From positions 1 to 16,935 of the forward strand of contig NW_021824971.1 of the NCBI RefSeq assembly GCF_006345805.1: 16,935 bases of DNA, read 5' to 3'. Below the pieces are notes generated by a model that was given only the letters and a program-made list of their open reading frames with translations, had not been told where the DNA came from and ran no database searches. This document shows, piece after piece, positions 1 to 16,935 of this stretch. Position 1 is the first letter of the stretch, and every line of letters begins with the position of its first letter. The stretch is from Octopus sinensis (taxonomy: Eukaryota). Made by a program: the position numbers and the translations under genes.

Positions 1-20
1 GAACAAATATATATATATAT

Positions 21-51
<31 letters not shown>

Positions 52-490
52 CAGACTTCTTCGCTTCCCTCTTGGTGTGTGTGTGTGTGTGTAAATATAT
101 CATCTTTGTGTGTGTTATAATATATATCCATACAAAACATCCATCAAGGTATTCCGAAATAATTGAAAATGCGTAATACTTTTTTCCCTTCGACAAAACA
201 GGGTCACTTAAAGGTGACTACGAAAAATTCCATTTGTTGTAAGCTGCTCTGTGTGTGTCTTAACATTTTCCCCTACCGCAATAAAGAAAGATCTGTCCTG
301 ATCCAAACAGACACATGACGAAAGACGTTCCAATCGTGACTATCACGTCATTTTTTTTTTTTTAATACTTCCTTTTTTTCTTCTTTTTCTGGGGGGTTTT
401 TCTGGACTATTGGACTACTTTATCCAATGATTCTTTTTTTTTTATGTATATACTAGGTTGTGATTTGGCTGTTATAAGCCAGTGTGTATG

Positions 491-541
<51 letters not shown>

Positions 542-570
542 ATATAATATATAATATATATATTTGCATG

Positions 571-727
571 TATGTATGCAGATTACGTATATGTTGTATA
601 TATATGGATAATTATCAATTATTCAATATATATATATATATATATTTGTATGTGTGTGTTATATGTATGTATAGGTGCGTGCTTATATGTGTTGTATATA
701 TATATGGATAATTATCAATTATTCAAT
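571..727. repeat. Tandem duplication, period 100 bp, inside a TA-rich tract
   Basis: tatatggataattatcaattattcaat is identical at 601-627 and 701-727. Confidence 0.85.
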
Positions 728-741
728 GGATATATATATAT

Positions 742-816
<75 letters not shown>

Positions 817-1210
817 TATATTTGCTTGTATGTATCTGTGTGTAAATGCAGAATATGTGTGTAGAATTTTGGCTTCTTCCTTTGTGTGGAAGTTTAAGGA
901 AAACATATGTATATATAAGAAAGAAGAAGTAAAAAATGGCACAGAAGAGAGTTTTGATAATTTTTAGTCGTAGATATTTCGCTCTTCACAGAACAAATAC
1001 TCATAAATCGAGCGACGCCAAGAGAAATCGGTAATTCCAACATTGAAAAGGGTTGTAAGAGACCTTTGTTCCCACGAAGAAAAGGGGATTGAAGAGAAGA
1101 AAAGTATAGATAAACGGTAAAATTTGTAGGCAAAAAGAAAGACCCCGGTCAGAGCAAATTTCGACTAAAGCCATCTTCTTCCTTGTGATTCGAGTCTTGT
1201 GCTTTGCCAG

Positions 1211-1229
1211 CCCGGTAACATCAAGGGAG
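1211..1229 (+). other. Candidate 19-nt plus-strand microexon (acceptor uncertain)
   Basis: ccatcttcttccttgtgattcgagtcttgtgctttgccAG|cccggtaacatcaagggag|GTAAGT. Alternative acceptors would start the exon at 1195 or 968. Confidence 0.25.
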
Positions 1230-1352
1230 GTAAGTAGGTTGCCGCTACTGATGAATTAACATTGTGAAGGATACATACACAGATATATAAATGTATATAT
1301 ATATATATATATATATATAGAAGATATATATATGTATGTGTGATATATATAT

Positions 1353-1437
<85 letters not shown>

Positions 1438-1488
1438 CGATATATATATGTATGTGTGATATACACTGATATTATATATATATGGATA

Positions 1489-1524
<36 letters not shown>

Positions 1525-2468
1525 CATACACTCACATGAAGACAACATACTCTAGTATATAATATTCATATATATATATTTAAAGTGAAAAGATCCACAA
1601 ATATACACACACCACACATAATATATATATAATATATATATATATATAGATATATTATATACGTATATATGCGCATGCTCTGCATGCGTGGGTGGGCTGA
1701 AGACATTTCATAGCTTTTTACGCACATATATACATACATATGTAACAAAGTAGTGTGTGTGTGTGTTTATATATATATATATATACATACATAGACGCAT
1801 ATATACATACATACATACATACATACATACATACATAGACGCATACATATATGCATATACGCTGAGCTATCAGCATGCGTGGGTGGGTTAAAGATGTATT
1901 TGGCGCCTGAATGAGCTGGGGACGATGGCAGGCAGAGATAATAGTAATAAAAAAGAAAATAAGAGAGGTTTGCTGGTAATGGTGTTTGGATATAGAGAAT
2001 GTAAAGAATTTTGGTGGATCTGAGAACAAGAGCACATGACTTGCGTATAATTAGGACACACACATTCACACACACACACACACACACATATATATACAGT
2101 ATACATACATACTATATATGAGTAGTTTAGTCTCTTTTATCTGTAGCTTTCTGTAAGTCAAAATGCAGGGGCAGAATAACGGACCACAAGTTGACATTAG
2201 GGGAGTTTTTCGATTAACGAAACGGGAATGTGGAATCTATCAGGGAAATATGGAGAAAATATTTGTGAAACTGTAAAGGAATTTAGTGTCATTTCACGAT
2301 TCTTAAAGTGGAAAAGGAACTTTTTATACACCCGGATTTAGCAAGAAAAATATGTTCCTCGGAGCTGTTAAAACAACTAACTAAAGATTTGATAAATTTT
2401 TTCCTGTTTCAAAACAATGCAAAATACAAAAATATTTATTTTTGAAAATATAACACAATTTTAAAGAA

Positions 2469-2529
<61 letters not shown>

Positions 2530-2545
2530 ATATATATATATATTA

Positions 2546-2621
<76 letters not shown>

Positions 2622-2624
2622 CAT

Positions 2625-2658
<34 letters not shown>

Positions 2659-3512
2659 TTTTAGCTCTCTTTTCTATTATTCATTTATAAGATTTTAAAG
2701 TTTGATGTTAATATTTAAAAAAGAAAAGAAAGCCATATGGATGAAGATGCTGAAAGTGGTATTCATTTATCATCTTCACGTCATTCCTTTCATACTGTTA
2801 TGTCAAACTTAATGGTTTTGATTTAATTCCTGTGATTTTAATTAAATGTTAATTTAACATGATTTAACGCGATTTTTCTTTCATTCAAACAGACTCCAAT
2901 GCATTTAAATGTATATTTGCCAACGTATACTTAAGTGTATAAAATTGATGTATTCCTATTGAGGACAAGGTCAAATGAACAACTGGTATTTGGAGTTTTA
3001 AATTAAATGCTCTATATGTCTATATATAAAAACTGATCGCTTTGAAAAACAAAATAGAAAAAACGAATATGTTATGCTTCAGTTATTTAGGAAGTTCAAA
3101 ACGTATGGCCTAGATAAATGAAATATTTGTTCCGATTTATATATAAGTTTATTTGTGTGGGGGTGGAAATTAAAATCGATATCTTTTTGTACATGGAGAA
3201 TGAAATCCCAAATTTTATAGTACAAAAAAAAAACCTAACAGTGCAAACACCAATCGAAGAAGGAAAACATGTAAATAACATTCAAAGGATTAAGATTGAG
3301 ATATTAAAAAAAAAAAAAAATTTCCTCTCGATATTAACAGAGAAGAAAAAAAAATTTTTTCAATGAGAGATATGAGGAAGAATTTGGAGAAAAAGTCTTG
3401 TGACACTTTCAAAGCAGGGGAGATAAATTAATATAAAAATAGAGACGTAGGTGGCGATAGTGTGAAATGAGCAGAGTTCAAGGTGACATAAATACAGAAT
3501 TCTTATAACTTT

Positions 3513-3608
3513 TACAGTACAGCTGATGGCCTATGTGCGTTGATATAGACGTGTATATATATATATACACATCTACATCAACGTACACGGGCCATCAGCT
3601 GTACTGTA
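3513..3608. mobile_element. Foldback MITE-like palindrome, probable TA target-site duplication
   Basis: Arms 3513-3560 and 3561-3608 are reverse complements at 43/48 positions. The ends read TA|CAGTACAG...CTGTACTG|TA, consistent with Tc1/mariner-type ends. Confidence 0.75.
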
Positions 3609-3738
3609 TATATAATTTTTTTTAAATCTTAGGGTAGCAAAAATATTTATAAAAAATTCTTTGCTACCAGTGGTCGAGTGAGAAGGAAAAATTTAGTCAA
3701 TAGACTATATATTATTCATAGAAAAATACAGTGTACAT

Positions 3739-3925
3739 TCAAACACATAAGAGATAACCAAATAATAGGATATCTGACTCACTAGAAAGAGCAGTTAAAA
3801 ATCCAAGCTACTATTAGTTTGATCACTTTTCCTGCATATCTGTACTTGAAATAAATATTAGTGTTTTAACTGCTCTTTCTAGTGAGTCAGATATCCTATT
3901 ATTTGGTTATCTCTTAAGTGTTTGA
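3739..3925. mobile_element. MITE-like element with 62-bp terminal inverted repeats
   Basis: 3739-3800 and 3864-3925 are reverse complements with one mismatch, separated by a 63-bp spacer. TA dinucleotides lie just outside both arms. Confidence 0.8.
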
Positions 3926-4094
3926 GTAAATATATAGTATGTGTGTATGTAGTACACTGCACACATGCATTCTCAACACAGTCGCTTGATATGCTGGAAA
4001 TGCAAACCACACACACTACTGCCCTCAAAGAATGGAAGAACACTTTGAATAATTTAGTCCTAAAGACACTATGAAAACATAACACTATAAGGTG

Positions 4095-4440
4095 ACTGCA
4101 GTTGAAAAACTTCTGACATCAGGATTCTCGATAGGGGTCACCTAGGGCTAAAGGGCAACACCCGATGATGTCGTTGAGGAAAACTCAACACGATCGCTAG
4201 TCGTTTTAGAAATAGCAGCTAAACCACTCTTCACTGGTGTTCTAACTGCTTTGGAAAGCAATAGCCCTACAAACTTCTAAACACCGAAATCCTTTTGAAT
4301 ATAGTTCAGATGGATCAGAGCTGATCAGGAGCTAAAAGGCCAAACAAATACATACATTAGATATATGCAGGCCACACCTCACATTTGGAGCCAACGATGA
4401 AGCCTCTTCGGGGTCGTTCAAAATGCTAGAAATAACAGAA
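4095..4440. mobile_element. Cluster of decayed dispersed-repeat fragments
   Basis: tagaaatagcag at ~4207 recurs at ~7458 and as tagaaataacag at ~4426; ttcggggtcg at ~4407 matches the SINE core; ggctaaa-type ends at ~4145 and ~4330 resemble 7276-7283. Confidence 0.4.
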
Positions 4441-5094
4441 AAGTTATTCCGTGTAATCAAACCTAACACCCTTTCAAAAACGCTATACATTGTATAGCTT
4501 CTCAGGTTACAGTGTAAATGAATAAGAGACGAGATAGTCTTGGTTAGAATGCTCTTGTTATTAACAAAGGTGTGTGACATGGGCAAAATAACAAAGGCAA
4601 TCACTACCCACTCGCACGCGTACATCACACATACACCACAAACCGCACATACTAAAAATAAACCAGAAATAACACACATAGACCTACTGATTTTACCTGA
4701 CTGAAAATAACAGAGACGCAAATTAATTTTAGATCGATTAAACAATTTTACAAATGCACAAGTGCGCATATGAATATATGGAAATAGAGAGAGATACACA
4801 AAGGTTGGTTGAGATTTGGCAGATAAACGAGGAAGTACTCAATACATGTTCTATATTTGGTTTATTCAAACTAAGCATACATACTCGCACACAAACATTT
4901 AATGAAGGATTAAAAGCATGTATTTTAACACCTCGAATTTCGTTTATGGTAAATCGTATAATATAGAACAGTGTCTTAATTATCACAAAACTCGCTAATT
5001 TGGAGCGCAATTTGATAGACTATTTAAGAGAATTAACAATAGGGGTAACAAGCTAACAATATCATTCGTTAGGGGATCTGTTGAAGGGAGAGAG

Positions 5095-5255
5095 ATGTCA
5101 TGCGGCATTTGTTCCGATTTTTTACATTCTGAGTTCAAATTCCATGGAGGGCAACTTTGCTTTTCATCCCTCCGGGGTCGAAAAAGTTAAATACCAGTCT
5201 GGTACTAGGGTTGAAGCAATCAACAAACACTCTCCTAAAATTTGTTGGCTTTGAG
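5095..5255 (+). mobile_element. Degenerate tRNA-related SINE-like copy
   Basis: B-box-like GAGTTCAAATTCC at 5131, then ttttcatccctccggggtcgaaaaa. It is similar to the copies at 5522 and 10331 in this window. Confidence 0.65.
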
Positions 5256-5521
5256 GATAAATTAGAAACATGTTAGGAACAGACGATGTAAGAAGGAAAT
5301 TGCTCGCCCAATATTGTTAAGTACAAGCTGTCAGTACCCCCTTAGCATCATTATAGACTCGGGCTGAATAAACCAATGTACTGGGGCCCTATAGCGTCCA
5401 TTAGCAGCAATCCACAGCATACATAGAATAAAATCGGGACCCTAGATCCGTGGGGTCCCTGGCCAGCCCTGTTAATAAGAGGTAAGAACTATGTAGCCCT
5501 GTATTATATTATTTAGATACA

Positions 5522-5665
5522 GAGTTCAAATAACGCCGAAGTCAAGCTTTCCGTCCATCCTTTCGGGGTCGATAAAAAAAAAAAGCATCACTGTTGTGCA
5601 CTGGATTTCGATGTATTCGATTCCCTCTACCCTCAACATTGCTGGCCTTGTGCCAAAATTAAAAA
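5522..5665 (+). mobile_element. Degenerate SINE-like copy, same family
   Basis: GAGTTCAAATAACGCCGAAGTC...catcctttcggggtcgataaaa...gctggccttgtgccaaaatt; shares its core with 5131-5185. Confidence 0.7.
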
Positions 5666-5796
5666 GGATTATTAGATAGACTTTGTAAGTCTATCAATAA
5701 TGTTGGTGACCCTACATTATTGCAAAACTTACATGAAAATTTATTTCAAGTACAGATATGCAGATAAGTGGTAAAACTAGGTTTTTCGTTTCGTTC

Positions 5797-5800
<4 letters not shown>

Positions 5801-5837
<37 letters not shown>

Positions 5838-5920
5838 GTTATTAAAAGCAGTAGAAAATCACAAAAACTGTCAGTTTTATGTTCCCATTTGTCGGGCAGG
5901 GTAGAATATATATATGTATG

Positions 5921-5995
<75 letters not shown>

Positions 5996-6228
5996 GTATA
6001 TATATATATGAATTAATAATAAAAGGGTAAAATTAATTTAATCAATTAATCAATCAATCAATTAATAATTTTACCAATGATTCATTATTTTTCTCTTTGC
6101 CTACGTAAAAAATAAAGTTACTGTCTGGGAGATTCTTACGGCAGTAGAAAAGGAATTTTAACTCCTATTTCTAAATTCGGTAGCAGACCCCTAATTATAA
6201 TTATGTTTATGATTATAGAATATTTGAG

Positions 6229-6264
<36 letters not shown>

Positions 6265-6355
6265 TGTATGTATGTATGTATGTATGTATGTATGTATCTA
6301 TGTATGTATGTATGTATGTATGTGTGTATGCATGTATGTATGTGTGTGTGCGTGT
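5801..6355. repeat. (TA)n and (TATG)n microsatellites
   Basis: Tracts at about 5801-5834, 5908-6010 and 6231-6355. Confidence 0.95.
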
Positions 6356-6454
6356 AATTATAATTATTATTTGTCACCAATGCTAACATTACTCCTTAGT
6401 AAGTTATGTGAGGGTTTGCGGTTGTTTACGAACTTGCCTTTATTTCTATTTTAG

Positions 6455-6477
6455 CAAAGGTGCGGACAAATGATGAG
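6455..6477 (+). other. Candidate 23-nt (or 18-nt) plus-strand microexon
   Basis: cttgcctttatttctattttAG|caaaggtgcggacaaatgatgag|GTAAGT: pyrimidine tract, acceptor and consensus donor. A CTAAC branch-like site lies at 6383. Confidence 0.4.
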
Positions 6478-7221
6478 GTAAGTTTTACCGAATGCCTCCT
6501 TTGACCTCGATAAATGCACCTTGAGTTTTTTTTTTTATATATATATTTATTCCTGATCAAAGCGAGCATAATTTATTCCATTCCATATGTCGTTACGCAT
6601 TACATACATACATACACGTGAGAGCGACATAGACATCTGTGTGTATATATACAAATATGTATCCGTGCCTCTGTGTGTGTGTGTTTATGGGTGCATAAGC
6701 TTGTATGTATGTATGTAAAATAATAAATAAAGGTGCGCCAGCACTTCGTGAGATTGCCAACTAATGTTGAACGCAATGACACTAGATCCAAACAAACGAA
6801 TCGGACTTCAAAACATCCGGAGACTGACACCCAACACCGGTTGGTTGCTAACCACACAGCGAACGTTGTCAAAGATACCATGCACCAGTTTGTTACCCAA
6901 AGCTACGTTGCGTAAATAAATACCCTCAAATCACACCCTATCGTCTGGAAACATAACGAAGGCTACATTATTAAATACTGATATTAATGATTTAATTTAT
7001 TGCACGATAACATTTAATAATATTCCTATAATATATATACAGGTGTTTTCGTATATAATCAACATGCGATGTATATAGGTATATGTTTGTACACACACGC
7101 ACGTGAGCGCGCTCGAGTACATGCGTTCATGTTTTTTGTATCGCTGTGGAATTTAGGGCCCACAATGGAAGAACACATTGGATACTGTACTCTTCGGTAG
7201 ACTATGCCTAGGGAAAAAGAG

Positions 7222-7360
7222 GGTCATAGCTGAAACATCTTTGACCGCAAATCTGTTCAGTCAGGTCCGAATTAGGGCTAAACAACAACAGCTAAATATT
7301 TTACTGGCCCCGAGGAGCCAGTAAAATGCAAAATTCACCCAGGCAGATATTGAACTCGGC
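7222..7360 (-). mobile_element. Inverted SINE-like fragment plus a second dispersed-repeat remnant
   Basis: The reverse complement reads gagttcaatatctgcctgggtgaattttgcattttactggctcctcggggccagtaaaa (SINE core-like). It is followed by ttgttgtttagcc..., which also occurs at 9185-9197. Confidence 0.5.
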
Positions 7361-7473
7361 ATGTTAAATTATGGAAGTTAATAGCGCAAAGCATTTTAGT
7401 TCAATGCGCTTCCGATTCTGCATTCAAAGAAAAAAAAAAAAAGAAGACTCGCCCTGCTAGAAATAGCAGTTAA

Positions 7474-7674
7474 TTCTCAATCAAATCACAAGTGACAGTC
7501 TCAGAAAATGGTCCCCAGTTCCTTGCACACGAATGGCGCCAAAATACAAAAATGAACGAGGCTAACAAGGGAGCCCTTTTCGTGATTGATCGACTAGAAA
7601 TCGCAGTCAAATCGCTCTTAAGTTGCACTCTACGGACTTCAGAAAAAGAAGGACACATGGATGTGTCCGACTGA
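7474..7674 (+). pseudogene. Probable relic of a Ty3/Gypsy-type integrase
   Basis: The translation FSIKSQVTVSENGPQFLAHEW...LRTSEKEG resembles the rve integrase core motif (SDNGPQF). The catalytic D appears as E and the segment is short and isolated. Confidence 0.45.
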
Positions 7675-8806
7675 CACAAGTACTGAAGGAAAATAAAAAA
7701 ATTTAAAAAAGGAAAGAAATCAAATAAATAAATAAATACGTGGCATGGTTCTTCGGCTTCAAATGCCTTTAAAGGTTAAGTCTGTCTCCTCGACAAGAAT
7801 CGACTTGGCGTTAAAGAACAAAAACAATAACACGCAATAATAATCGAAACACAGGTAAGAGAGAGAAGAGGCGGTTTGGCTTGAAGTCCAGTGAAACGAT
7901 TCTGATAATGAAACCCATACTACAAAGGTTTTATAAACTTTAAGTCACGTGCTTAGGTAATAAGTTTTAAATAACCCTTCGTGTTTCCGCTACGTCACTG
8001 CTATTACAACTAAACTACAGGTTGCTTGTACATAAAATGAAAGTGTTTATTACTCGTATATGTAACGCCTGCGTGTGAAGATACATATACGTTCAGTCTG
8101 GCGAAGACTAAGAAGACGATACTTAATTTAACTTTTACGTTGTAACAATAAATGTGATAATCAGATTTATCGAACGATAAATTAATGTCAATTAATGTCA
8201 TTTTTTTTTTTGTGTATTTTGTATGTATATGCATTCATTCTTAGAGAGTTCCTGCACACACGAACGTGTAATTTCTGCCTATCAAAAATTATACACACAC
8301 ACACAAACATATATATATATATATATATGTAGATCATATCCATTTGATAGATTCACATGTCAAAATAATTGTGCGGTATATTCCACAAACCCACACGTAA
8401 ACTGCAAAACCAAGAGCACTGTATACCAATATATATATATGTACACGCGCACATATTATATACACATGCACACTGTTACCAATATATAATCACGGATCAT
8501 GAATAAATAAATATTATACAAGGCTCATATTCTAATAAGCATTTAGTTTCTCGGGGCAAATTAGGAGCTAATACACGCGCGCAAAAATGAATAAATAATT
8601 ATAAAAAGCAACAGCGAAACGAAGTAAGGGCAGCGAAACGAAACGATACTAATTGACGATAAACATTTTAGAAAGCTCCCTGGCAATTGCTTCTCTTTCT
8701 CTCTCTACTTCTTTTACATTCGTGCTGGTTTATTTACAAAACAATATCACATGTTGAAGCAAGATTTTCGTTGTTTATTTTTTCTTTCTATCTTATTTTC
8801 ATATTC

Positions 8807-8951
8807 TTATCGTTACTTTGTGGTTACGTTTTATCGTTTTGGGTACTTTTTATCGTTAGTTTTGTGTTATTTTTTTATCGTTACTGTTTTGGGGTTCATC
8901 ATGTTCCTATCATTACGTTTTTTTTTTCTTCGTTTTCAATATTTTATCGTT
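8807..8951. repeat. Cluster of five TTATCGTT motifs (degenerate minisatellite or homotypic site cluster)
   Basis: Exact TTATCGTT at 8807, 8831, 8850, 8875 and 8944. Confidence 0.7.
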
Positions 8952-9214
8952 ACTTTGTTTTGTTTTTCTCTGTTTCTTTGCAAAGAAATAACAACAAGCA
9001 AGCATATACATAGAAGGAAATCAGTTTGTGTAACATTCATGCTTTGAAAAATGCGTTTGTGTAACAGTCATGCCTTGAAAACAATTTTCTGCAAGAGAAG
9101 AATTTCGTGCGGATGGGTGAGGTGACATACATGTCTGTAGATATATTAACTGGCTTCATTTTTGACCCCACTCTCTCTCTCCATTTGTTGTTTAGCCTTA
9201 AGGACTTTGAAAGC

Positions 9215-9728
9215 ACTCCAGCCTATGCCGTGTTAAGGCACGGCACACTGGACGGGTTTAGAGACCCAAGAACTCCAATCCATGCCGTGTTAAGGCACTG
9301 CACATTGGGAAGTTTTCCGAGTGGGCTCGCGGGTTTAGAGACCCAAGAACTCCAACCTATGCTGTGTTAAGGCACGGCTTATTGGGAAGTTTTCCGAGTG
9401 GGCTCGCGGGTTTAGAGACCCAAGAACTCCAACCTATGCTGTGTTAAGGCACGGCACATTGGGAAGTTTTCCGAGTGGGCTCGCGGGTTTAGAGACCCAA
9501 GAACTCCAACCTATGCTGTGTTAAGGCACGGCTTGTTGGGAAGTTTTCCGAGTGGGCTCGCGGGTTTAGAGACCCAAGAACTCCAACCTATGCCGTGTTA
9601 AGGCACGGCACATTGGGAAGTTTTCCGAGTGGGCTCGCGGGTTTAGAGACCCAAGAACTCCAACCCATGCCGTGTTAAGGCACGGCTTATTGGGAAGTTT
9701 TCCGAGTGGGTTCGCAGTTTTAGAGACC
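9215..9728. repeat. 77-bp minisatellite: six full units plus partial flanks
   Basis: The unit start GGGTTTAGAGACCCAAGAACTCC recurs at 9254, 9331, 9408, 9485, 9562 and 9639, with a partial at 9716 (spacing exactly 77). A truncated unit lies at 9215-9253. Confidence 0.97.
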
Positions 9729-10330
9729 TAATTCTGATCTAAAGCTTGGGGTCTAAGGGCTCAGAGCATTGATTTGTCTGGTGGCGGGAGCTATATCTAT
9801 AACTAATTACATTCGTTACTTAAAGACTGCAGGCTGTGTGGCTTAAGAGAGATTTTAGTTGTTATATTTAGCAGGTCCTTCAAACACCTTTAAAACAAGG
9901 TGGTCTTGTAAAAGTCATGTCATTGTTTCATTATAACCGCATTGTTGTCGTGTGGCCCACTGTGACGTATATTTCTCATTCAACTAGGAACTGCTACACA
10001 GACACAAGTCGCGTTATAATTATTACATGGTTCATGCTCTCACAAAAAAAAACTTCGGGATTAGTAAAAAGTAGATTTTTACATTTATCATCATTGTTAT
10101 TGTGTTGGTGATGGTTCATAGATTTCTATGTTGTTCGTTTTGTTACTCTTCCTGGCAAAGGATTAAATCCAGTGATAGTCGACTGTGTGATACATCGTCG
10201 ATTAGAAGTTGGGAACGCGTTTTGCCATCCGTTTTTTTTTCTTTCTTTCTTTCTTTAGAGAGAGAAATTTTGTTGTCATATTCACTGCGTTGTCATCAAG
10301 CAGTACTGGCCATTTAGTTCAGCTTGTTTG

Positions 10331-10400
10331 CGTTCAAATCCCGCTGGGGTAAAGTTTGCCTTGCATTTATTTCATCCTTCTGAGGTCAGATAAAATCGAG
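10331..10400 (+). mobile_element. SINE-like fragment, same family
   Basis: gttcaaatcccgctggggtaaagtttgcc...ttcatccttctgaggtcagataaaa matches the core of the other copies. Confidence 0.55.
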
Positions 10401-10531
10401 TGTTCCGTCCCCAAATCCCTAGTTTTGTGTGTGCGTATGTGTGTGTCTCTGAGTGAGATTTTGGAACAATAGCATTCCTTAATTACGCTAACGAAGGCTT
10501 CAAGATCTTCTTCAGTCAAGTGTATATATAT

Positions 10532-10563
<32 letters not shown>

Positions 10564-10887
10564 CACATACACACGCTATATATGCGCACATAACATTCGT
10601 TGTATCATTCAACGTATTGGGGGGGGGGGCTAATGGGTTTTTTTTTCTTTTTTTTTTTTCAAAATTTAAAACAGTTATACACATTTTGTTTTTCCACGCT
10701 GAATGTAAGCCTCAACATCTCATTTGTAAAATTAAAACCATGCAATCTTAGCAACAACAAAAATTAAGCTTAGCAACTATTTTTCATTCATCCGACCCAT
10801 ATTTGATTTCTTCTTTCTTTCAACTTCTTACTTTCAGTTTTTTTAAATCTATTTATTTATATATTTCAGTTTTTAACCTCTTAACAT

Positions 10888-10949
10888 ATTATGCCGTATA
10901 TTTTCGTTCAGATATGTCTAGTAAATATATATTTGAACGAAAATATACG
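10888..10949. other. Stem-loop with a perfect 16-bp inverted repeat
   Basis: 10895-10910 CGTATATTTTCGTTCA pairs with 10934-10949 TGAACGAAAATATACG. On the plus strand the stem extends inward by ~7 bp using two G-U pairs, leaving a ~9-nt loop. Confidence 0.85.
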
Positions 10950-11246
10950 TTCACTATACTTTGAGACATCTATCACTTATTTCTAACCAGAAATACTTCG
11001 TTCATGATGTTATTCTATAGTTTTCTATAGTTAACCGATCCAAAATAACTTATGTACTTATTCTTCCTAATATACAGATTCAAAATAAACAATAAATAAT
11101 AGAAATATATTTTTTGCATGGATATTGAAAAAGATGTGTGTTTTAAGAGGTTAAGTTTAATCAATCAGAGATAGGAAAAACAAGCGCGATCGAGATGGAT
11201 TTAAAAGCGAACAGCGAAAGAAAGAGAAATAAAAGTTTTTCTTCCT

Positions 11247-11248
11247 AC
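11247..11248 (-). other. 5' splice donor; start of an intron that probably runs toward or past the window start
   Basis: CAG|GTAGGAAG, followed by an abrupt composition shift to AT-rich, repeat-filled sequence. Confidence 0.7.
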
Positions 11249-12178
11249 CTGTTGAGCTGATGATTGCGCGGATGCTGGATTGGTTGTGTAAGTGACAGGC
11301 AGTTTGAATTCCAAACAATGCGCCGGTTCTTCTAAACATGGGGTAGGTTTGTGTTCCGATAGTGCGCCGTAGTTCCGATCCCCAGCTACAAGACACCAAA
11401 ATGTTCCCCGCCTGGCAACAGTCGGGACTCATCCCGGGAGGTCCTTGGAAATGTTGCGGGAAATTGTTTCGGAAGTTGGCCATAAAATGATGGTCCATGC
11501 TCATGGGGAAACTGCTCGGACTTCCGTAAGAAGAAGTAGAACCGTTGTTGTTGTTGTTGTTGTGGTTATTGTTGTTGTGGTGGTGATGATGATGGTGGTG
11601 GTTCATCGTGTTCAAATCGTTTGTTCTGTTTCTTCTGGCAACCGATCGAATCGGTATTGGTCGGCTGTGAGACACACCGTGTCGTTGCGAACTCGGAAAT
11701 GCGCTGTTCCCACTTACTCCGTCTTTGGAGAAGACATCGTCGTCGTCATCCTCATCGTCGTCGTCGGCGGCGCCTACCACTTCGTCTTCGTCGTCGACGT
11801 CATCGTTATTATCGCCGTCTTCATCGTCGTCGTCGTCCTTGTCCAAATCTCCATCGACGTCGTCGTCGTCGTCGACGTCGCCAACGACAACATCATCGTC
11901 GTCGTCGTCTTCGTCGTCGTTTTCGTCAAAGTCGTTCGAACTCCTCTCTCGCATCGAGTAATCGCTCATACTCTCTACACTACACAGACTGGTCGATATG
12001 ACAGCTGGGCCACGGCGACGACCACCGCCGCCGCCGCCCACAGCACCGATAGCAGCAGTTGTATTATTTCCTATCGACAGAGCCTGGAACTGCTGTTGAA
12101 GATGATGATGATGTTGCTCCTCCTGCTGCTGTTGTTGCTGCTGCTGTATGTGCTGCGGGAAGTAGAGAGGATGGGAGA

Positions 12179-12212
<34 letters not shown>

Positions 12213-12707
12213 TTGCTGCTGCTGGTTGTGGTAACGGTGGGGATAGTTCTGCGGACCTTCGAAGAGCTGGCGGCGGCAGACAGAGCGGCAATAGTGCTGC
12301 TGTTGGCGATATTGGTGCAAGTGATACTGCTGCTGCTGTTGTTCTTGCTGATGTTCTTCGTCTCCCTTCTGCTGCTGCTGTTGTTGTTGTTGTTGTTGTT
12401 GGTGGTGGTGGTGTTGAAGATGTTGGTCTGGTTCGAAACTGAACGTAAAACCAGGCGAAATATTAGAAGGGGAGTCGTCAGTGGCGTAGCTGCTGTCGAA
12501 AGATCCCACCGAGGGCGTGCAAGGGGTCATACTGGACAAGTTCCGAATGGAATCGTCGTCGTCGTCGTCTTCGTCGTCGCCCCCGCCGTCTCCGAAGGGG
12601 CCAATTGTTGTGTCTTCGACGGCAACTTTTGTCTTGGGCTGGGTAGGTTTTTGGTTGGAGTTCAGTGAATCGTATAATTCTTCACTGATTGGAGCAGATT
12701 GCATCAT
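11249..12707 (-). CDS. First coding exon (486 codons + 1 nt, phase-1 donor) of a low-complexity protein; candidate Bmf/Bim-like BH3-only protein (BH3 exon not seen)
   Basis: It is the only long ORF with non-repetitive, protein-like segments, and it is GC/CpG-rich against an AT-rich background. ATG is at 12707-12705. The minus-strand donor CAG|GTAGGA has GT at 11248-11247, after which the sequence turns AT-rich. Motifs: DSSY (aa71), RRQLF (aa145-149), DDVF (aa323-326), CC (aa430-431), TQT (aa452-454). The exon is well supported; the family call is inference. Confidence 0.8.
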
Positions 12708-13125
12708 AATTGAACCAAAAAAGCAAAAAAAAAAAAATTTTTCACTGAATTCTTTAAGTCCTTTTTAGTAAATATCAAGTGTTCTCAAACACAAAAAAAA
12801 AAGGATTTATTTAAATCAAAAGAAGCGAAACAAATACTGCAACAAGTTTTTTTTGTCTTTGTCTTTTCAAGATCCAAGAACCAATGTTCAATAACATGAG
12901 AACTTTAATCTGATAATAATGGAATAGTGGTAAATCCTTTTTTTCTTTTCTCTTCAATAAATTGTCAGTGAAAAAAAAAGGGCAAAAGGCAAACAAAGTT
13001 ATAACAAGTAAATAATAATAATAATAAGTATTTTTAGTCTCTGTGTGCGTAATGTTGATAATGATGTAATTTCCCAACTGAATTCTTCACAATTTTTGTT
13101 TCTTATTCAGGGTCCACACTGTATT
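12708..13125 (-). other. 5' UTR portion of the same exon, behind a strong splice acceptor
   Basis: The minus strand reads ttttcttttctttttcatatttctttcAG|aatacag (AG at 13127-13126). There is no AG between the poly-T tract and the ATG. A weaker alternative acceptor (cactgacaatttattgaAG, exon from 12951) also exists. Confidence 0.55.
12811..12897 (-). other. Single ATG-initiated upstream ORF (28 aa, MLLNIGSWILKRQRQKKLVAVFVSLLLI*) in the putative 5' UTR
   Basis: It is the only minus-strand ATG I found between 13125 and 12708. It stops at TAA (12813-12811), about 100 nt before the main ATG. Confidence 0.4.
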
Positions 13126-13150
13126 CTGAAAGAAATATGAAAAGAAAAGA

Positions 13151-13359
13151 AAAATTATAGATAGGTATATCGATAGATAGACAGACAGGTAGATAAAGGA
13201 AAATAATAAAGGGAAAAGATGAACGGTAATATATATATATCGGTGACGAAAAGATGAGTAAAATTATAGACAGGTACATCGATAGACAGACAGATAGATA
13301 GATAGAAAAAGAAAAAAAAATAAGGAAAAAAGGTGAACGGTAATAGATATATGGGTGAC
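13151..13359. repeat. Tandem duplication, period ~109 bp, two diverged copies
   Basis: aaaattatagaYaggtaYatcgataga starts at 13151 and 13260. Both copies contain gRtgaacggtaata and end near ggtgac (13242, 13354). Confidence 0.85.
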
Positions 13360-15037
13360 AGTTTAGGAATAAGTTTTGTTGTAACTGCTTTAAAAAAAAG
13401 CAAAACGAAATAAAACCCACGAAAAGGACAGAAGGAGAGATAGAACAAAATCGCAAAACAAAGCATGTAATTTGCTCATATGTATATATATGCTGCGTAT
13501 ATATATATATATGTGTGTGTATGTGTGTGTGTGTGAGTGTGTGTATTAATAACCATAGTGTGACCAGTGACTGAAAGTTCTAAAGTTGTATAATAGTATA
13601 TTTTCATAAACATTGGTGAGATAAGAAAATGTAAACAAATTCTACGAGAAACGATTCTTGCTCTCTTTTTTTGTTTTTTTTTGTATCGATAAATAGCAAA
13701 ACGTGAACAGAGAATGCGAAAGTAAACTAAAAAAAGACTTATTTACTAAGTTTTCGATTTTTTTTCCTCGCTCTCTCTCTCTCTCTTTTTCGCACACTTT
13801 CTTCCAGTCATCCCAAGAAATATTAAAATTCGTCACAAAATTTAACACAAAAGCATCTACACACACATATAAACTGGATTCATTTAAAATATACTAAAAA
13901 AAACAATTTCTTTCTGTTCGCCGATGTACATGATTCCCCATCTATACCCACGTCTGACTCTCTCTCACAGCATGTGTGTGCTAGTTACATAGTTTAAATT
14001 TTAGCTTCTAAGACAAAATGAAACGTGAAAAGGGTTTATCTAATATTTACGCTTAAAAAGTCGAAATTTTAAAGTAATACAAGTAACTTTTTTCTAGCAA
14101 AAAAAGTTTCAGATAAAGAAAAATTACTTGAAAAACATGTATCTATCGCTTAGTAACAACTATATTTTTTTAATTTAAAGCAAAAACTTTTTCACGCGAA
14201 AAAGAATTACTTTAAAACAAAACATACGTGTAGAAAATATTTAATACGGTTTAACTTAGTAAGCGATAATATTTTTCAAGATATAGTTTACAACAAAAAC
14301 GAAAAAAGAAAGTACGCGTATATGATAAGATATAATTGTATTAATACATGTTGGCGATAAAAAATATCTTTAACATGAGAAAACTTTTTTCATACGAAAT
14401 ATACAAAAAAAAAACATTTTTTTTTTTCATATGTAAAAGCTTTTACAAAAAAAGATTTTTGTATGTACCTTTATATCCTTGAATTTCTTTGGAATATATA
14501 ACCAAAACGTCACTTTTTTCCCCCTTAAATTAAAAGCAAGTCCGCGCAACTTTCAAGAAACTTTCCTTTTAAATCCAGTTAGAGCGTGTGCAATAAATAT
14601 AAATAAATATCTGTTCAATTGTAAATGTTGTGATTATTTTTTCCTGTTAGTCGCTATAAATATGTAAGCATATATTGTTCTTTCACTTTTTATAAATATA
14701 TAAATATAATTGTAGGTTTTTTTTTTTCTTGTGTGTTTCTTTCACTTTGTAAAGATAATATAAAAATGTAAATATATATATATATATATATATGATTAAA
14801 TATATGCTTCTCTCGTGTGTTTTCTGATTTTTTTTCTTCTTCCCTTAGAAGTTTCCCAAACAAATACCTTATCAGAAATGAAGCTAGATTGGTAAGGAAC
14901 GCTATAAATAACAATAAAATATTACGTCATCAGATGTGAGTAAGAGTTATAGAGTGGCGGTGGCAGTGATGTGCTTATTAAGATGGTGGTGGTGGTGGTG
15001 GTGGTGGTGGTGGTGGTGATGCTTATTGCCGCGGTAC

Positions 15038-15150
15038 CTCTTGTGTGTGTGAGTGAGTAAGTGTGTGTGTGTGAGGATGTGTGTGTGTGAGCGTGAGTGT
15101 GTGTGTGAGGGGAAGTGAGAGTGAGCGGGGAATTGGCTATTTAGCGATGG
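15038..15150 (-). promoter_or_regulatory. Possible upstream non-coding exon of the minus-strand gene
   Basis: Minus-strand donor-like AAGAG|GTACCG (GT at 15037-15036). An upstream exon is required if the 13126 acceptor is real. The donor match is weak and the position is tentative. Confidence 0.2.
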
Positions 15151-15198
15151 TATTATTGCTTATTACAGTTGTATACTTCGTATATGTGTGCGTGTATG

Positions 15199-15233
<35 letters not shown>

Positions 15234-15312
15234 ATGTGTGTGTGTGTGTGTATTTGCACATATTTGTGTACCCCTCTCTGGCTGTGTGTATATGTACGTG
15301 TGCGTGAGATAG

Positions 15313-15343
<31 letters not shown>

Positions 15344-15463
15344 AAGTTTGTGCGTATGGTAATGTCATAGATTTGTTTACTGATGCGTAGCGTGTTTTGT
15401 ATGTGTGTGTAGTTATGTATGTATGTGTGTTACATGCGCGTGCGTGCAACAGCATTTCTGCGC

Positions 15464-15510
<47 letters not shown>

Positions 15511-16088
15511 TGACTGACTGACTGAGAGATAGAAAGAGACAAAGGTAAAAACACATGCGTGTGTATTATATGTGCGTAAACATACGCACATGTGTAGCTA
15601 TGTACATAAAACATCGACGATTGCGCTGTGTGTGTACGTGTGTGTGTGTGTGTGTGTGTGCAAGCATGCCTTGTGGGTGTGTCTTAAGTTAACTTCGGCG
15701 TGCGCGCGCATGCGTGTGAATACTGGTGTGCGCGCGTAAATTTTTTTTTGTTTGTGTACGTTTGAGTATATATATATATGTGTGTGTGTGTGTGCTTCTA
15801 GATGAGAATCTTCCAGATATATATGTTTATATAGACTCGCCCTACCCTTTCCCAGGACAGTGTCTTTTGATTATATCCACACACACACACACATACACAC
15901 ACGTGTGTGTGTGTGTGTGTACACATACAAACATACACGCATACATTACATGAATATATATATAGATAGATATATATGTATACAATTATACATATACATA
16001 CATATATATGCATACATATAGTACACATACGTTCATTCATACATACATACACACATTCATTACATGAATATATATATATATATATATA

Positions 16089-16152
16089 CAACCATATATA
16101 CATATACATACTTATATATGCAACCATATATACATATACATACTTATATATG
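16089..16152. repeat. Perfect 32-bp tandem duplication in a TA/CA-rich tract
   Basis: caaccatatatacatatacatacttatatatg at 16089-16120 and 16121-16152. Confidence 0.9.
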
Positions 16153-16710
16153 CATACATATATTACACATACGTTCATTCATACATACATACATACACAC
16201 ACACACACAATAAACATCATATATACGGTAGGTTTGTGTGTGCGTGTTGTGTGCGTGTGTGTGTGCGTGTGTTTATGAATAAAGAGGAAGTGAGGTTGGA
16301 GGGGAGGAATTCGTTGGAGTGTGAGTGAGAGTGAAACTTTAGACGGAAAAGCTATATGACAGGAGTAGGAGGGAGAAATAGACGGAACAGAGAAAGGAGG
16401 AGGAGGAGAGGAAAGAACTAATGAGTTTAAACAAGTCCACACGCCGACGGTGTGCATATGTGTGTATGTTAGTGTGTGTGTGTATGTGTGTGTTAGTGTG
16501 TATGTGTGTGTGTTATGTGACAGATAAATTTTGATAAGACATAGAAAGAGTGTGTATATGTGAGTGTGTGGTATATGTGTGGTGTGACTTGGGGAAATAG
16601 AGTGTCGGTGTAAGTGTGTGTGTGTGTATGTGTGTATGGGAGATACAGCGATAGGGGGGGAAATACAAAGATAGATAGATAGGTATATGTACATACATTG
16701 TGTTATCTGG

Positions 16711-16745
<35 letters not shown>

Positions 16746-16935
16746 TGGTGTGTGTGTGTGTGTGTGCGTGCGTGTGTGTAACTATGTTTGTGTGTGTGTG
16801 AATAATGTTCGAAGACGTTAGCTTTCACTTTTGAGGGACGCGTGAAAAACGACTTTGTTGTTTATATACTATCATAAACATAACAATTACTTAGTTACAG
16901 GAAAATAAGTTATACACACACGCACAGACGCATAA

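What the first reader, a model, noticed from the sequence alone, without database searches (positions are those of the whole stretch)
11249..12707. Candidate cephalopod Bmf/Bim-like BH3-only apoptosis regulator hidden in low-complexity sequence
Seen in sequence: three short islands in order, DEDDDDDVFSKDG (aa~318-330), PDCCQAG (CC at aa430-431) and RRTIGTQTYP (TQT at aa452-454), with the exon ending 33 aa after TQT. Established: vertebrate Bmf has ELEDDVFQPEDG near its N-terminus, then THCCGPG, then the DYNLL/LC8-binding DKATQT, with the BH3 further C-terminal; Bim carries DKSTQT. Inference: the collinear order and similar CC-to-TQT spacing (20 vs 13 aa) suggest a diverged Bmf/Bim ortholog. 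BH3-only proteins are hard to detect in lophotrochozoans because they are short-motif, disordered proteins, so this gene could be annotated as uncharacterised.
Basis: partly seen in the sequence, partly recalled or inferred. Interest (0 to 1): 0.85.

Follow-up and report, generated by a model that had tools for sequence, protein, structure and literature searches.

The report
Octopus Bim/Bad-like BH3-only gene, first exon
This stretch is the first coding exon of the octopus copy of a cell-death trigger gene related to vertebrate Bim and Bad; databases name it as a "homeobox" or "mef2A-like" factor, and oyster papers from 2017 and 2022 say molluscs have no such gene, although a 2022 survey had already listed it as a candidate.

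Summary
Window 11249-12707 (minus strand) is one 486-codon exon that starts at an ATG and ends at a CAG|GT donor.

The main prediction also holds. In Octopus bimaculoides and Argonauta hians the same exon is spliced to a 75-residue exon. That exon carries an RxRxxSxP site (RDRAHSLP) and a BH3 motif, IGQELRRISDEY. The BH3 exon is not in this window, because the window is a whole 16.9-kb scaffold and the Argonauta intron is 61 kb.

The gene belongs to a conserved family found in molluscs, brachiopods, annelids, echinoderms, hemichordates and amphioxus. There are 136 hits at E<=1e-3, and every member whose name I looked up is called uncharacterised, hypothetical or unnamed. Members share three coding exons and ordered motifs:
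- DSGYxTDxSPA
- an acidic stretch with VF
- R-x-[IV]-G-TQT-P
- RRxRxxSEGE
- PLPDLVP
- RDRSxSLP
- VGRELRRISDEF

The family profile matches human BAD (hhalign 96%, 87 columns) and human BIM (96%, BH3), but BMF only weakly (31%). TQT is invariant in 29 aligned members. The CC island is found only in octopods and is probably chance.

A 2022 review (PMC8998228) already lists "potential BH3-only proteins" from O. bimaculoides, oysters, scallop and Lottia. This is therefore a new member of a known candidate kind. No member has been tested experimentally.

The parts
11249..12707 (-). First coding exon (486 codons plus 1 base) of the Octopus sinensis Bim/Bad-like BH3-only gene. It encodes the disordered N-terminal regulatory half.
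   Evidence: ORF and translation. 98% identical to XP_036354419.1 (P0001) and 74% to O. bimaculoides P0002. The homologous exon 1 was mapped in 7 species.
12705..12707 (-). Start codon (ATG ATG; the protein begins MMQSAPISEELYDSLN).
   Evidence: The same N-terminus is found in O. bimaculoides and Argonauta.
11247..11248 (-). GT of the splice donor (CAG|GTAGGA), phase 1, splitting a conserved Gly codon.
   Evidence: Sequence. Argonauta has an identical junction and a 61-kb intron. The junction precedes RRxRxxSEGE in all 7 mapped genes.
12462..12503 (-). SFDSSYATDDSPSN (aa 69-82), the octopus form of the family block RDSGYxTDxSPA. In relatives this is a canonical DSGxx[S/T] betaTrCP-type phosphodegron, and it resembles BimEL SSGYFSFDTDRSPAP. 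The G-to-S change makes the octopus copy non-canonical.
   Evidence: Scoring matrix from 32 non-cephalopod instances; 2 of 20,000 shuffles reach the score. Alignments. Collinear alignment to human BIM. The degron function is inferred.
12084..12422 (-). Gln/His-rich low-complexity insert (aa 96-208), specific to cephalopods. It is the cause of the misleading 'homeobox 13-like' and 'mef2A-like' names.
   Evidence: Present only in the cephalopod rows of the alignments. No DNA-binding domain in Pfam.
11718..11933 (-). Poly-Asp/Glu tract (aa 259-330) ending in DDDDVFSKDG. It is an expanded form of the family's acidic D/E-x-[VI]-F motif.
   Evidence: DDDVF is conserved in Argonauta and the two squid-like sequences. 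The acidic-VF motif is found in 14 of 26 full-length members. It is not statistically separable from the poly-D background in the octopus.
11640..11666 (-). SRPIPIRSV (aa 348-356), a conserved S-x-P-I-x-I-[PR] block.
   Evidence: Conserved in cephalopods, Lingula, echinoderms and amphioxus.
11406..11426 (-). PDCCQAG (aa 428-434), conserved only in octopods. Probably not a homologue of Bmf THCCGPG.
   Evidence: Argonauta has SPDCCPAG, while the squid-like P0005 and P0021 have SPELDHVG. CC occurs in 11.6% of shuffles.
11340..11369 (-). RRTIGTQTYP (aa 447-456), a candidate LC8/DYNLL-binding motif. TQT is the anchor, Thr is at -4, and Tyr-Pro follows.
   Evidence: TQT is invariant in 29 of 29 aligned members. 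Scoring matrix from non-cephalopods: 4 of 20,000 shuffles. The block aligns with BIM STQTPSPPCQAFNHYL. LC8 motif rules are from PMC6607443. Binding was not tested.
11157..11248 (-). Start of the intron. It is read through to a stop in the NCBI 'isoform X3' model, giving the tail ..GRKKNFYFSFFRCSLLNPSRSRLFFLSLID, which is not conserved.
   Evidence: The P0001 tail compared with the P0002 and P0003 continuation.

Best explanation
Window 11249-12707 (minus strand) is exon 1 of the octopus member of an old bilaterian family of BH3-only proteins. These proteins are intrinsically disordered and combine, in one chain, features that vertebrates show in Bim and in Bad.

Shown: the exon encodes the N-terminal regulatory half. 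It holds a DSGxxT-type degron-like block, an expanded acidic tract, and the invariant TQT motif. In orthologues it is spliced to a 75-residue exon. That exon carries a basophilic-kinase site (RRLYSEGE), PLPDLVP, an RxRxxSxP site (RDRAHSLP) and the BH3 helix IGQELRRISDEY. A short C-terminal exon follows.

[quoted passage not shown] Four controls would hold this activity in check. LC8 could dock at TQT, as in Bim and Bmf. Phosphorylation of the RxRxxS sites could recruit 14-3-3, as at Bad S112/S136. Phosphorylation of the Ser inside RRIS-DEY could block groove binding, as at Bad S155. Degron phosphorylation could drive turnover, as in BimEL.

The cephalopod-specific poly-Q/H, poly-D and poly-H/N tracts are expansions between the motifs.
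For: - Orthologue sequences contain the BH3.
- A profile built only from cephalopod sequences finds Haliotis (E 2e-8), Lingula (E 1e-6) and others among 5.8 billion proteins.
- An exhaustive profile search finds 136 proteins at E<=1e-3 and 77 at E<=1e-10. Two are vertebrate BAD-type sequences: P0132, named BAD by UniRef, at E 5.7e-5, and the unnamed P0137 at E 3.7e-4.
- Pfam Bclx_interact (the Bim BH3 model) matches 10 of 14 members, and the BAD model matches 9 of 14. Lingula, P0007 and amphioxus pass the curated Bim-BH3 cut-off.
- hhalign of 29 invertebrate members against human BAD gives probability 96.2%, E 2e-9, over 87 columns. Against human BIM it gives 95.7%, E 9e-9.
- A deuterostome sub-profile aligns to SSGY..STQTP..PEI-BH3 of BIM in the same order.
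- The only PDB matches to the octopus BH3 are BAD and BIM peptides.
- AlphaFold: 337 of 533 residues have pLDDT below 50, while the BH3 helix at 488-521 has pLDDT 91-96 over residues 491-510.
- Block matrices tie the window's own exon to the family, with p about 1e-4 and 2e-4.
- The three-exon structure and the junction position are conserved.
Against: - The BH3 exon is not in the window. No O. sinensis transcript joining exon 1 to it was seen.
- The only O. sinensis model retrieved, isoform X3, reads through the donor.
- The octopus proteins themselves score below the Pfam cut-offs (14.5-15 bits against 25). The whole-exon HMM test with non-cephalopod sequences fails because of composition bias.
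- All the regulatory sites are short linear motifs that can arise by convergence.
- The octopus degron block has S in place of the canonical G.
- The LC8 motif lacks the basic residue usually found at -3.
- No member of this invertebrate family has been tested for Bcl-2 binding or killing (PMC8998228).
Confidence: 0.8

Rival explanations
1. It is simply the BAD orthologue. The TQT and DSGY motifs would then be additions specific to invertebrate lineages, unrelated to Bim or Bmf.
For: The longest and best profile alignment is to human BAD, at 87 columns covering both RxRxxS sites, the BH3 with RRxS, and the C-terminal Trp/Phe helix. Only BAD-type vertebrate proteins reach E<=1e-3 in the exhaustive search.
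Against: The Bim BH3 Pfam model scores higher than the BAD model in most members and passes its cut-off in three. TQTP-x3-C-Q in gastropods and amphioxus matches Bim TQTPSPPCQAF. Echinoderm SSGY..STQTPP..PEIxxGRELRRIGDEF is in the same order as BimEL.
Confidence: 0.2
2. It belongs to an independent BH3-only lineage whose resemblance to Bim and Bad comes from convergent short motifs, not common descent.
For: BH3-only proteins are widely regarded as polyphyletic (PMC11463336). Every shared element is a motif of 3 to 12 residues. N-terminal profile matches are weak: E 3e-4 and probability 39% for Bim.
Against: Five or more motifs occur in the same order and with similar spacing. The match to BAD runs over 87 columns at 96%. 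Amphioxus and echinoderm forms are intermediate between the mollusc and vertebrate sequences.
Confidence: 0.12
3. It is a Gln/His/Asn-rich transcription factor, as the RefSeq names suggest (homeobox protein 13-like, mef2A-like).
For: Only the database names and the low-complexity composition.
Against: Pfam finds no homeobox, MADS or other DNA-binding domain. The low-complexity tracts are cephalopod-specific inserts that non-cephalopod orthologues lack.
Confidence: 0.02
4. The family is real, but its conserved helix serves mainly a non-apoptotic role, such as metabolic or autophagy signalling through 14-3-3 and LC8, and it does not trigger cell death in molluscs.
For: No functional data exist for any member. 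Mollusc apoptosis differs from the vertebrate pathway; for example, no APAF-1 has been detected (PMC11463336).
Against: The Leu, Asp and hydrophobic positions of the BH3 are nearly invariant across phyla. Molluscs have Bcl-2, Bcl-xL, Bax and Bak homologues that interact through BH3 domains (PMC5550854).
Confidence: 0.1

Closest known systems
Vertebrate Bim (BCL2L11, BimEL isoform)
   Same: A disordered BH3-only protein. The motif order is SSGY(degron)-..-TQTP-x3-CQ..-BH3 (ELRRI[G/S]DE[F/Y]), followed by a C-terminal hydrophobic segment. The BH3 lies on its own exon. hhalign gives 95.7% on the BH3, and the alignment is collinear with the deuterostome members.
   Different: The octopus protein has Ser rather than Gly before the Asp. 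It has two RxRxxS sites and PLPDLVP between TQT and the BH3, which Bim lacks. It has no Bim_N Pfam match and carries very large low-complexity inserts. Its octopus BH3 score is below the Pfam cut-off.
Vertebrate Bad
   Same: RxRxxS (Bad S75/S112-like), then RxRSxSxP (S99/S136-like), about 20 residues, then GRELRR[M/I]SDEF with an RRxS site (S118/S155-like), then a C-terminal aromatic amphipathic segment. hhalign gives 96.2% over 87 columns. A fish BAD is recovered at E 5.7e-5.
   Different: Bad has no TQT motif and no DSGY block. The BAD Pfam model stays below its cut-off for every member (best 21.8 bits against 28.2).
Vertebrate Bmf
   Same: An acidic ..DDVF.. motif near the N-terminus, a TQT LC8 motif, a BH3, and possibly RLFYGNAG / LPLPASFP resembling RRLRYYSEGE / PLPDLVP. 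That last resemblance is by eye only.
   Different: Statistical support is weak: hhalign 31% on the BH3 and E 0.1 on the N-terminal half. There is no BMF Pfam hit. The CC resemblance is limited to octopods.
'Potential BH3-only proteins' of lophotrochozoans and ambulacrarians in Int J Mol Sci 2022;23:3691 (PMC8998228)
   Same: Very probably the same gene family. [quoted passage not shown] The BH3 lies on a single exon and the proteins are predicted to be disordered.
   Different: That paper shows only the BH3 region and reports no experiments. It does not mention the N-terminal exon motifs (DSGY, TQT), the Bad-type phosphosites or the conserved gene structure. I could not confirm the accession numbers. 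O. sinensis is not listed.

Membership tests
BH3-only proteins (functional class) | BH3 motif Phi-x3-L-x2-Phi-[G/A/S]-D-x-Phi on an amphipathic helix | tested here: met
   IGQELRRISDEY in O. bimaculoides and Argonauta. The AlphaFold helix at 488-521 has pLDDT 91-96 over residues 491-510. The only PDB matches are BAD and BIM BH3 peptides. The motif lies on the next exon, not in the window.
BH3-only proteins (functional class) | No BH1, BH2 or BH4 motifs and no globular Bcl-2 fold | tested here: met
   No Bcl-2 domain in Pfam. 337 of 533 residues have pLDDT below 50.
BH3-only proteins (functional class) | [quoted passage not shown] | not testable with these tools
   Needs binding and cell-death assays. 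None is reported for this family.
Bim (BCL2L11) | Pfam PF08945 (Bclx_interact) at or above 25 bits | tested here: not met
   Octopus and Argonauta score 14.5-15 bits. Relatives do pass: Lingula 26.0, P0007 27.9, amphioxus 27.4.
Bim (BCL2L11) | LC8/DLC1-binding TQT motif N-terminal to the BH3 | tested here: met
   RRTIGTQTYP at aa 447-456 in the window. TQT is invariant in 29 of 29 members. The block aligns with Bim STQTPSPPCQAF. The motif is present, but binding was not tested.
Bim (BCL2L11) | Bim N-terminal region (Pfam Bim_N) | tested here: not met
   No hit at E<=1 for any member scanned.
Bim (BCL2L11) | C-terminal hydrophobic membrane-targeting segment | tested here: inconclusive
   Argonauta and the squid-like sequence end in FSFPGANRIHDLLRILF / ..RINRVLYRIL. 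The two O. bimaculoides isoforms end differently. This part is not in the window.
Bmf | Sequence or profile similarity to BMF (Pfam BMF; hhalign) | tested here: not met
   No Pfam BMF hit. hhalign gives probability 31% on the BH3 only and E 0.1 on the N-terminal half.
Bad | Pfam PF10514 (Bcl-2_BAD) at or above 28.2 bits | tested here: not met
   The best family score is 21.8 bits, in amphioxus. The octopus has no hit.
Bad | Two RxRxxS 14-3-3/Akt-type sites upstream of a BH3 that contains an RRxS site, in that order | tested here: met
   RRLYSEGE .. RDRAHSLP .. ELRRISDEY in the orthologues. RxRxxSxP is present in 84 of 132 family sequences. The family aligns to human BAD residues 64-157 at 96.2%. 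Phosphorylation was not tested.
Invertebrate Bim/Bad-like candidate BH3-only family (PMC8998228) | Significant sequence relationship to the family, and shared exon structure | tested here: met
   A cephalopod-only profile reaches Haliotis at E 2e-8 and Lingula at E 1e-6. Block tests on the window exon give p of 1e-4 and 2e-4. The exon 1/2 junction is at the same Gly in 7 species.

The most novel reading that the evidence does not exclude
Bim and Bad, and probably Bmf, may not be unrelated BH3-only inventions. They may descend from one ancestral bilaterian gene that already carried every regulatory module in a single chain: a betaTrCP-type degron, an acidic VF motif, an LC8 TQT site, two 14-3-3/Akt sites, a PKA-type Ser inside the BH3, and a C-terminal lipid or membrane helix. 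On this reading the octopus gene is an unduplicated, low-complexity-expanded survivor of that ancestor. Vertebrates would have divided the modules among paralogues.
Probability: 0.4. Interest if true: 0.7.

Novelty: new member of a known kind. Interest (0 to 1): 0.55.

Why it matters
Papers on mollusc apoptosis state that no BH3-only protein has been found in the phylum, and they build models of a "simpler" pathway on that absence (PMC5550854, 2017; PMC8917759, 2022). A 2022 review only tabulates candidate BH3 segments.

This analysis shows that the octopus gene, together with its oyster, scallop, snail, brachiopod, annelid, echinoderm and amphioxus counterparts, forms one well-conserved family. 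Members share exon structure and a full set of Bim-type and Bad-type regulatory motifs. Researchers therefore have a concrete upstream trigger of mitochondrial apoptosis to test in molluscs.

The result also corrects misleading RefSeq names. Finally, it offers a testable route to the long-open question of where the vertebrate BH3-only proteins came from.

Tried and rejected
- tblastn of the O. bimaculoides and Argonauta C-terminal exons against the window found only low-complexity noise, so the BH3 exon is not here.
- phmmer of the 86-residue C-terminal region against PDB gave no hits. Only the 31-residue BH3 query worked.
- The look-up of encoding contigs had no record for P0002 or P0001. I therefore could not read the O. 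bimaculoides locus or the O. sinensis gene calls. Argonauta and six other species were used instead.
- An HMM built from non-cephalopod members did not score the window's exon above shuffled copies. The bias correction for the Q-, D-, H- and N-rich composition swamps the short motifs. I replaced this test with block scoring matrices.
- The DDxVF block matrix is not specific in the poly-Asp tract.
- The supplement of PMC8998228 holds no accession numbers. Dehan et al. 2009 is not in the held library.
- I asked whether the conserved upstream kinase neighbour is BUB1-like, which would have matched the human BMF-BUB1B and BCL2L11-BUB1 neighbourhoods that I recall from memory. It is DYRK/HIPK-like instead, so it gives no support for that synteny. 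It was not found in the window.
- Rfam and tRNA scans of the window were empty.
- The transcription-factor reading was rejected because no DNA-binding domain is present.
Full report
**1. What is in the window**

The minus strand of 11157-12707 holds the only long, non-repetitive ORF of the 16,935-base window. It starts MMQSAPISEELYDSLN.

At 11249 the frame meets CAACAG|GTAGGAAG, which is a good splice donor.

The exon is 13% Gln, 13% Asp and 10% Ser, with His and Asn runs as well. The 407-codon ORF on the opposite strand is just the mirror image of this low-complexity coding sequence.

Pfam finds no domain in the exon.

**2. Orthologues give the answer**

A search with the exon returned three proteins:
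- XP_036354419.1, "homeobox protein 13-like isoform X3" of Octopus sinensis (P0001, 98% identical).
- "Transcription factor mef2A-like isoform X2" of O. bimaculoides (P0002, 74% identical).
- A hypothetical protein of Argonauta hians (P0003).

P0001 sits on a contig of exactly 16,935 bp, so the window is a whole small scaffold. P0001 simply reads through the donor into the intron.

P0002 and P0003 continue after ..ISSTG with SVSRRLYSEGED..PLPDLVPVPRDRAHSLP..HIRAIGQELRRISDEYYQN. That last stretch is a BH3 motif: Ile, Leu and Ile, then a small residue (Ser), then Asp, then Tyr.

In Argonauta the gene has three coding exons. Exon 1 is followed by a 61-kb intron, then a 74-residue BH3 exon, then a C-terminal exon. 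The exon 1 donor is the same as in the window.

tblastn shows that the BH3 exon is not in the window. With an intron of that size, this is expected.

**3. Tests of the BH3**
- Pfam gives sub-threshold hits for the octopus proteins. The families hit are Bclx_interact (the Bim BH3 model, E 0.03) and PUMA, a second BH3-only family, plus chance-level CDC45 and YxzE matches.
- A 31-residue query against 177,635 PDB sequences returned four hits, all BH3 peptides of BAD and BIM (E 0.4-1.2).
- AlphaFold2 on P0002, using the family alignment, predicts a mostly disordered chain, with 337 of 533 residues at pLDDT below 50. It has a confident helix at 488-521, the BH3, with pLDDT 91-96 over residues 491-510. 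The only other confident helix is the poly-Gln/His run, which may be a low-complexity prediction artefact.

**4. A conserved family**

A profile made only from cephalopod sequences found uncharacterised proteins of Haliotis (E 2e-8), Lingula (E 1e-6), Batillaria, Pomacea and Apostichopus.

An exhaustive HMM search of 1.84 billion representatives gave 136 proteins at E<=1e-3 and 77 at E<=1e-10.

Members I could name are listed below. All are called uncharacterised, hypothetical or unnamed.
- Molluscs: Crassostrea virginica, Mizuhopecten, Dreissena, Lottia, Aplysia, Physella, Babylonia.
- Other lophotrochozoans: Owenia (annelid) and Lingula (brachiopod).
- Ambulacrarians: sea urchin, starfish, crinoid, sea cucumber and Ptychodera.
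- Cephalochordate: Branchiostoma.

The family has an ordered set of short blocks:
- RDSGYxTDxSPA..FTF
- an acidic stretch with [DE]x[VI]F
- SxPIxI[PR]
- Rx[IV]G-TQT-PxPxCQ
- RRxRxxSEGE
- PLPDLVP
- RDRSxS[LA]P
- VGRELRRISDEF
- FPG..W..LR..F

All 26 sequences that contain DSGxx[ST], TQT and a BH3 have them in that order. TQT, PD, R..S and LRR..D are invariant in the 29-sequence alignment.

Seven genes from six phyla share the three-coding-exon structure. In each, the exon 1/2 junction lies at a Gly just before RRxRxxSEGE, which is exactly where the window's exon ends.

**5. Is the window's own exon tied to the family?**

A whole-exon HMM test using only non-cephalopod sequences failed. The composition-bias correction cancels the score.

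Ungapped block matrices from non-cephalopod members did work:
- The DSGY..D.SP matrix has its best hit at aa 69, SFDSSYATDDSPSN. Only 2 of 20,000 shuffles reach that score.
- The TQT matrix has its best hit at aa 447, RRTIGTQTYPM. Only 4 of 20,000 shuffles reach that score.

Both hits are in the family order. The DDxVF matrix is not specific inside the poly-Asp tract.

PDCCQAG is conserved in Argonauta (SPDCCPAG) but is replaced by SPELDHVG in the two squid-like sequences. I take the CC resemblance to Bmf to be chance.

**6. Relation to vertebrate proteins**

I confirmed the human BimEL, BAD and BMF sequences by exact look-up. hhalign of 29 invertebrate members gave the following results.

| Human protein | Probability | E-value | Region aligned |
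|---|---|---|---|
| BAD | 96.2% | 2e-9 | 87 columns: RSRHSS (S75), RGRSRSAP (S99), the BH3 and the C-terminal WTRVFQSWW segment |
| BIM | 95.7% | 9e-9 | The BH3 and its flanks |
| BMF | 31% | 5e-4 | The BH3 only |

The N-terminal half alone aligns its TQT block with Bim STQTPSPPCQAFNHYL (E 3e-4). It does not align significantly with BMF (E 0.1).

A sub-profile of echinoderm, hemichordate and amphioxus members aligns SSGY..STQTP..PEI-BH3 collinearly with BimEL, at 94.6%.

Amphioxus LOC118417579 has three telling features in one chain: TQTPSPLCQVF as in Bim, RARSRSEP as in Bad, and ELRRISDEF.

Per-protein Pfam scores pass the Bim-BH3 cut-off in Lingula, P0007 and amphioxus. No member passes the BAD cut-off.

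Only BAD-type vertebrate sequences reached E<=1e-3 in the exhaustive search.

So the family works like, and is probably related to, both Bim and Bad. The link to Bmf in particular is not demonstrated.

**7. Likely mechanism**

This is inferred from the motifs and from established knowledge of Bim and Bad.
- The BH3 helix would bind pro-survival Bcl-2 proteins.
- The TQT block is a plausible LC8 site. Thr at -4 can form the polar contact, and the anchor is followed by Tyr-Pro. It lacks the basic residue common at -3, and many TQT peptides do not bind LC8 (PMC6607443).
- RDRAHSLP fits both RxRxxS (Akt and related basophilic kinases) and RxxSxP (14-3-3 mode 1).
- RRIS inside the BH3 matches the PKA-type site of Bad.
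- DSGxx[ST] is the betaTrCP consensus (PMC13097077 abstract). BimEL is degraded through a phosphodegron that RSK phosphorylates and betaTrCP recognises (PMC10487276). The octopus copy has DSSYAT, which is non-canonical.

None of this has been tested.

**8. Prior knowledge**

Two oyster papers say that no BH3-only protein is known in Mollusca (PMC5550854; PMC8917759). Two recent surveys of lophotrochozoan apoptosis left BH3-only proteins out.

However, PMC8998228 (2022) reports "potential BH3-only proteins" found by BLAST with human Bim, Bad and Bmf. Its Figure 5 legend lists O. bimaculoides, C. virginica, C. gigas, Mizuhopecten, Lottia, Lingula, Capitella, echinoderms and amphioxus. Only the BH3 region is shown, and the authors ask for experimental confirmation.

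The family is therefore already flagged. What this analysis adds:
- the O. sinensis member;
- the N-terminal exon motifs;
- the Bad-type phosphosites;
- the conserved exon structure;
- the composite Bim-plus-Bad architecture.

I found no paper in the held library that proposes a common origin of Bim, Bad and Bmf. That does not prove none exists.

**9. Verdict**

Three corrections apply: CC is chance, Bmf is not specifically supported, and the Bad relationship was missed.
- Novelty: a new member of a known candidate kind.
- Interest is moderate. It would be higher if the single-ancestor reading holds.

Noticed in passing
L002-L007, bases 1 to about 9500 of each (upstream of the family gene): In abalone, scallop, Lottia, Lingula, Owenia and amphioxus, the immediate upstream neighbour is a large protein kinase gene of 1242-1999 aa, oriented head-to-head. 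In Lottia its exons are most similar to DYRK2 and HIPK2 (E about 1e-32). This gene pair appears to be conserved across Bilateria. The kinase type is shown for Lottia, with weak tblastn support in Owenia, scallop and abalone. It is not shown for Lingula or amphioxus.
   Followed up: partly
window 1-16935: The window has exactly the length of the contig that carries XP_036354419.1. The O. sinensis gene is therefore cut off by the end of a small scaffold, and the RefSeq 'isoform X3' ends by reading through the donor into the intron (11157-11248).
   Followed up: partly
window about 12180-12230 (aa 162-178): The window encodes a run of 16 Gln where the RefSeq protein P0001 has a shorter run. The full ORFs are 516 and 506 aa. 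This is either poly-Gln length variation or a correction to the model.
   Followed up: no
window 9253-9728: A tandem repeat of 77 bp with 6.2 copies and 94% matches, lying inside the first intron. It gives no Rfam or tRNA match.
   Followed up: partly
window 11445-12668 (+): A 407-codon ORF lies antisense to the coding exon. It is rich in Val and Leu and is the mirror image of the Asp/Gln codon runs, so it is not a gene.
   Followed up: yes
window 11298-11315 (aa 465-470, FGIQTA): A second motif that looks like an LC8 site (GIQT) lies 13 residues after TQT. It is conserved in Argonauta (LGIQTA) and O. bimaculoides but not in the squid-like sequences (NIAA / NLAA).
   Followed up: partly
window 487-821, 1283-1528, 2469-2659, 6231-6347, 15464-15537: Long (TA)n, (TATG)n and (GACA)n microsatellites fill much of the AT-rich flanks and intron.
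   Followed up: no
P0201 compared with P0002 (O. bimaculoides isoforms X1 and X2): The two RefSeq isoforms diverge right after ..NRHHSHHQ and have different C-terminal tails. Neither tail resembles the FSFPGANRI..LLRILF tail of Argonauta and the squid-like sequence. The true last exon of the O. bimaculoides gene may be missing from the annotation.
   Followed up: no
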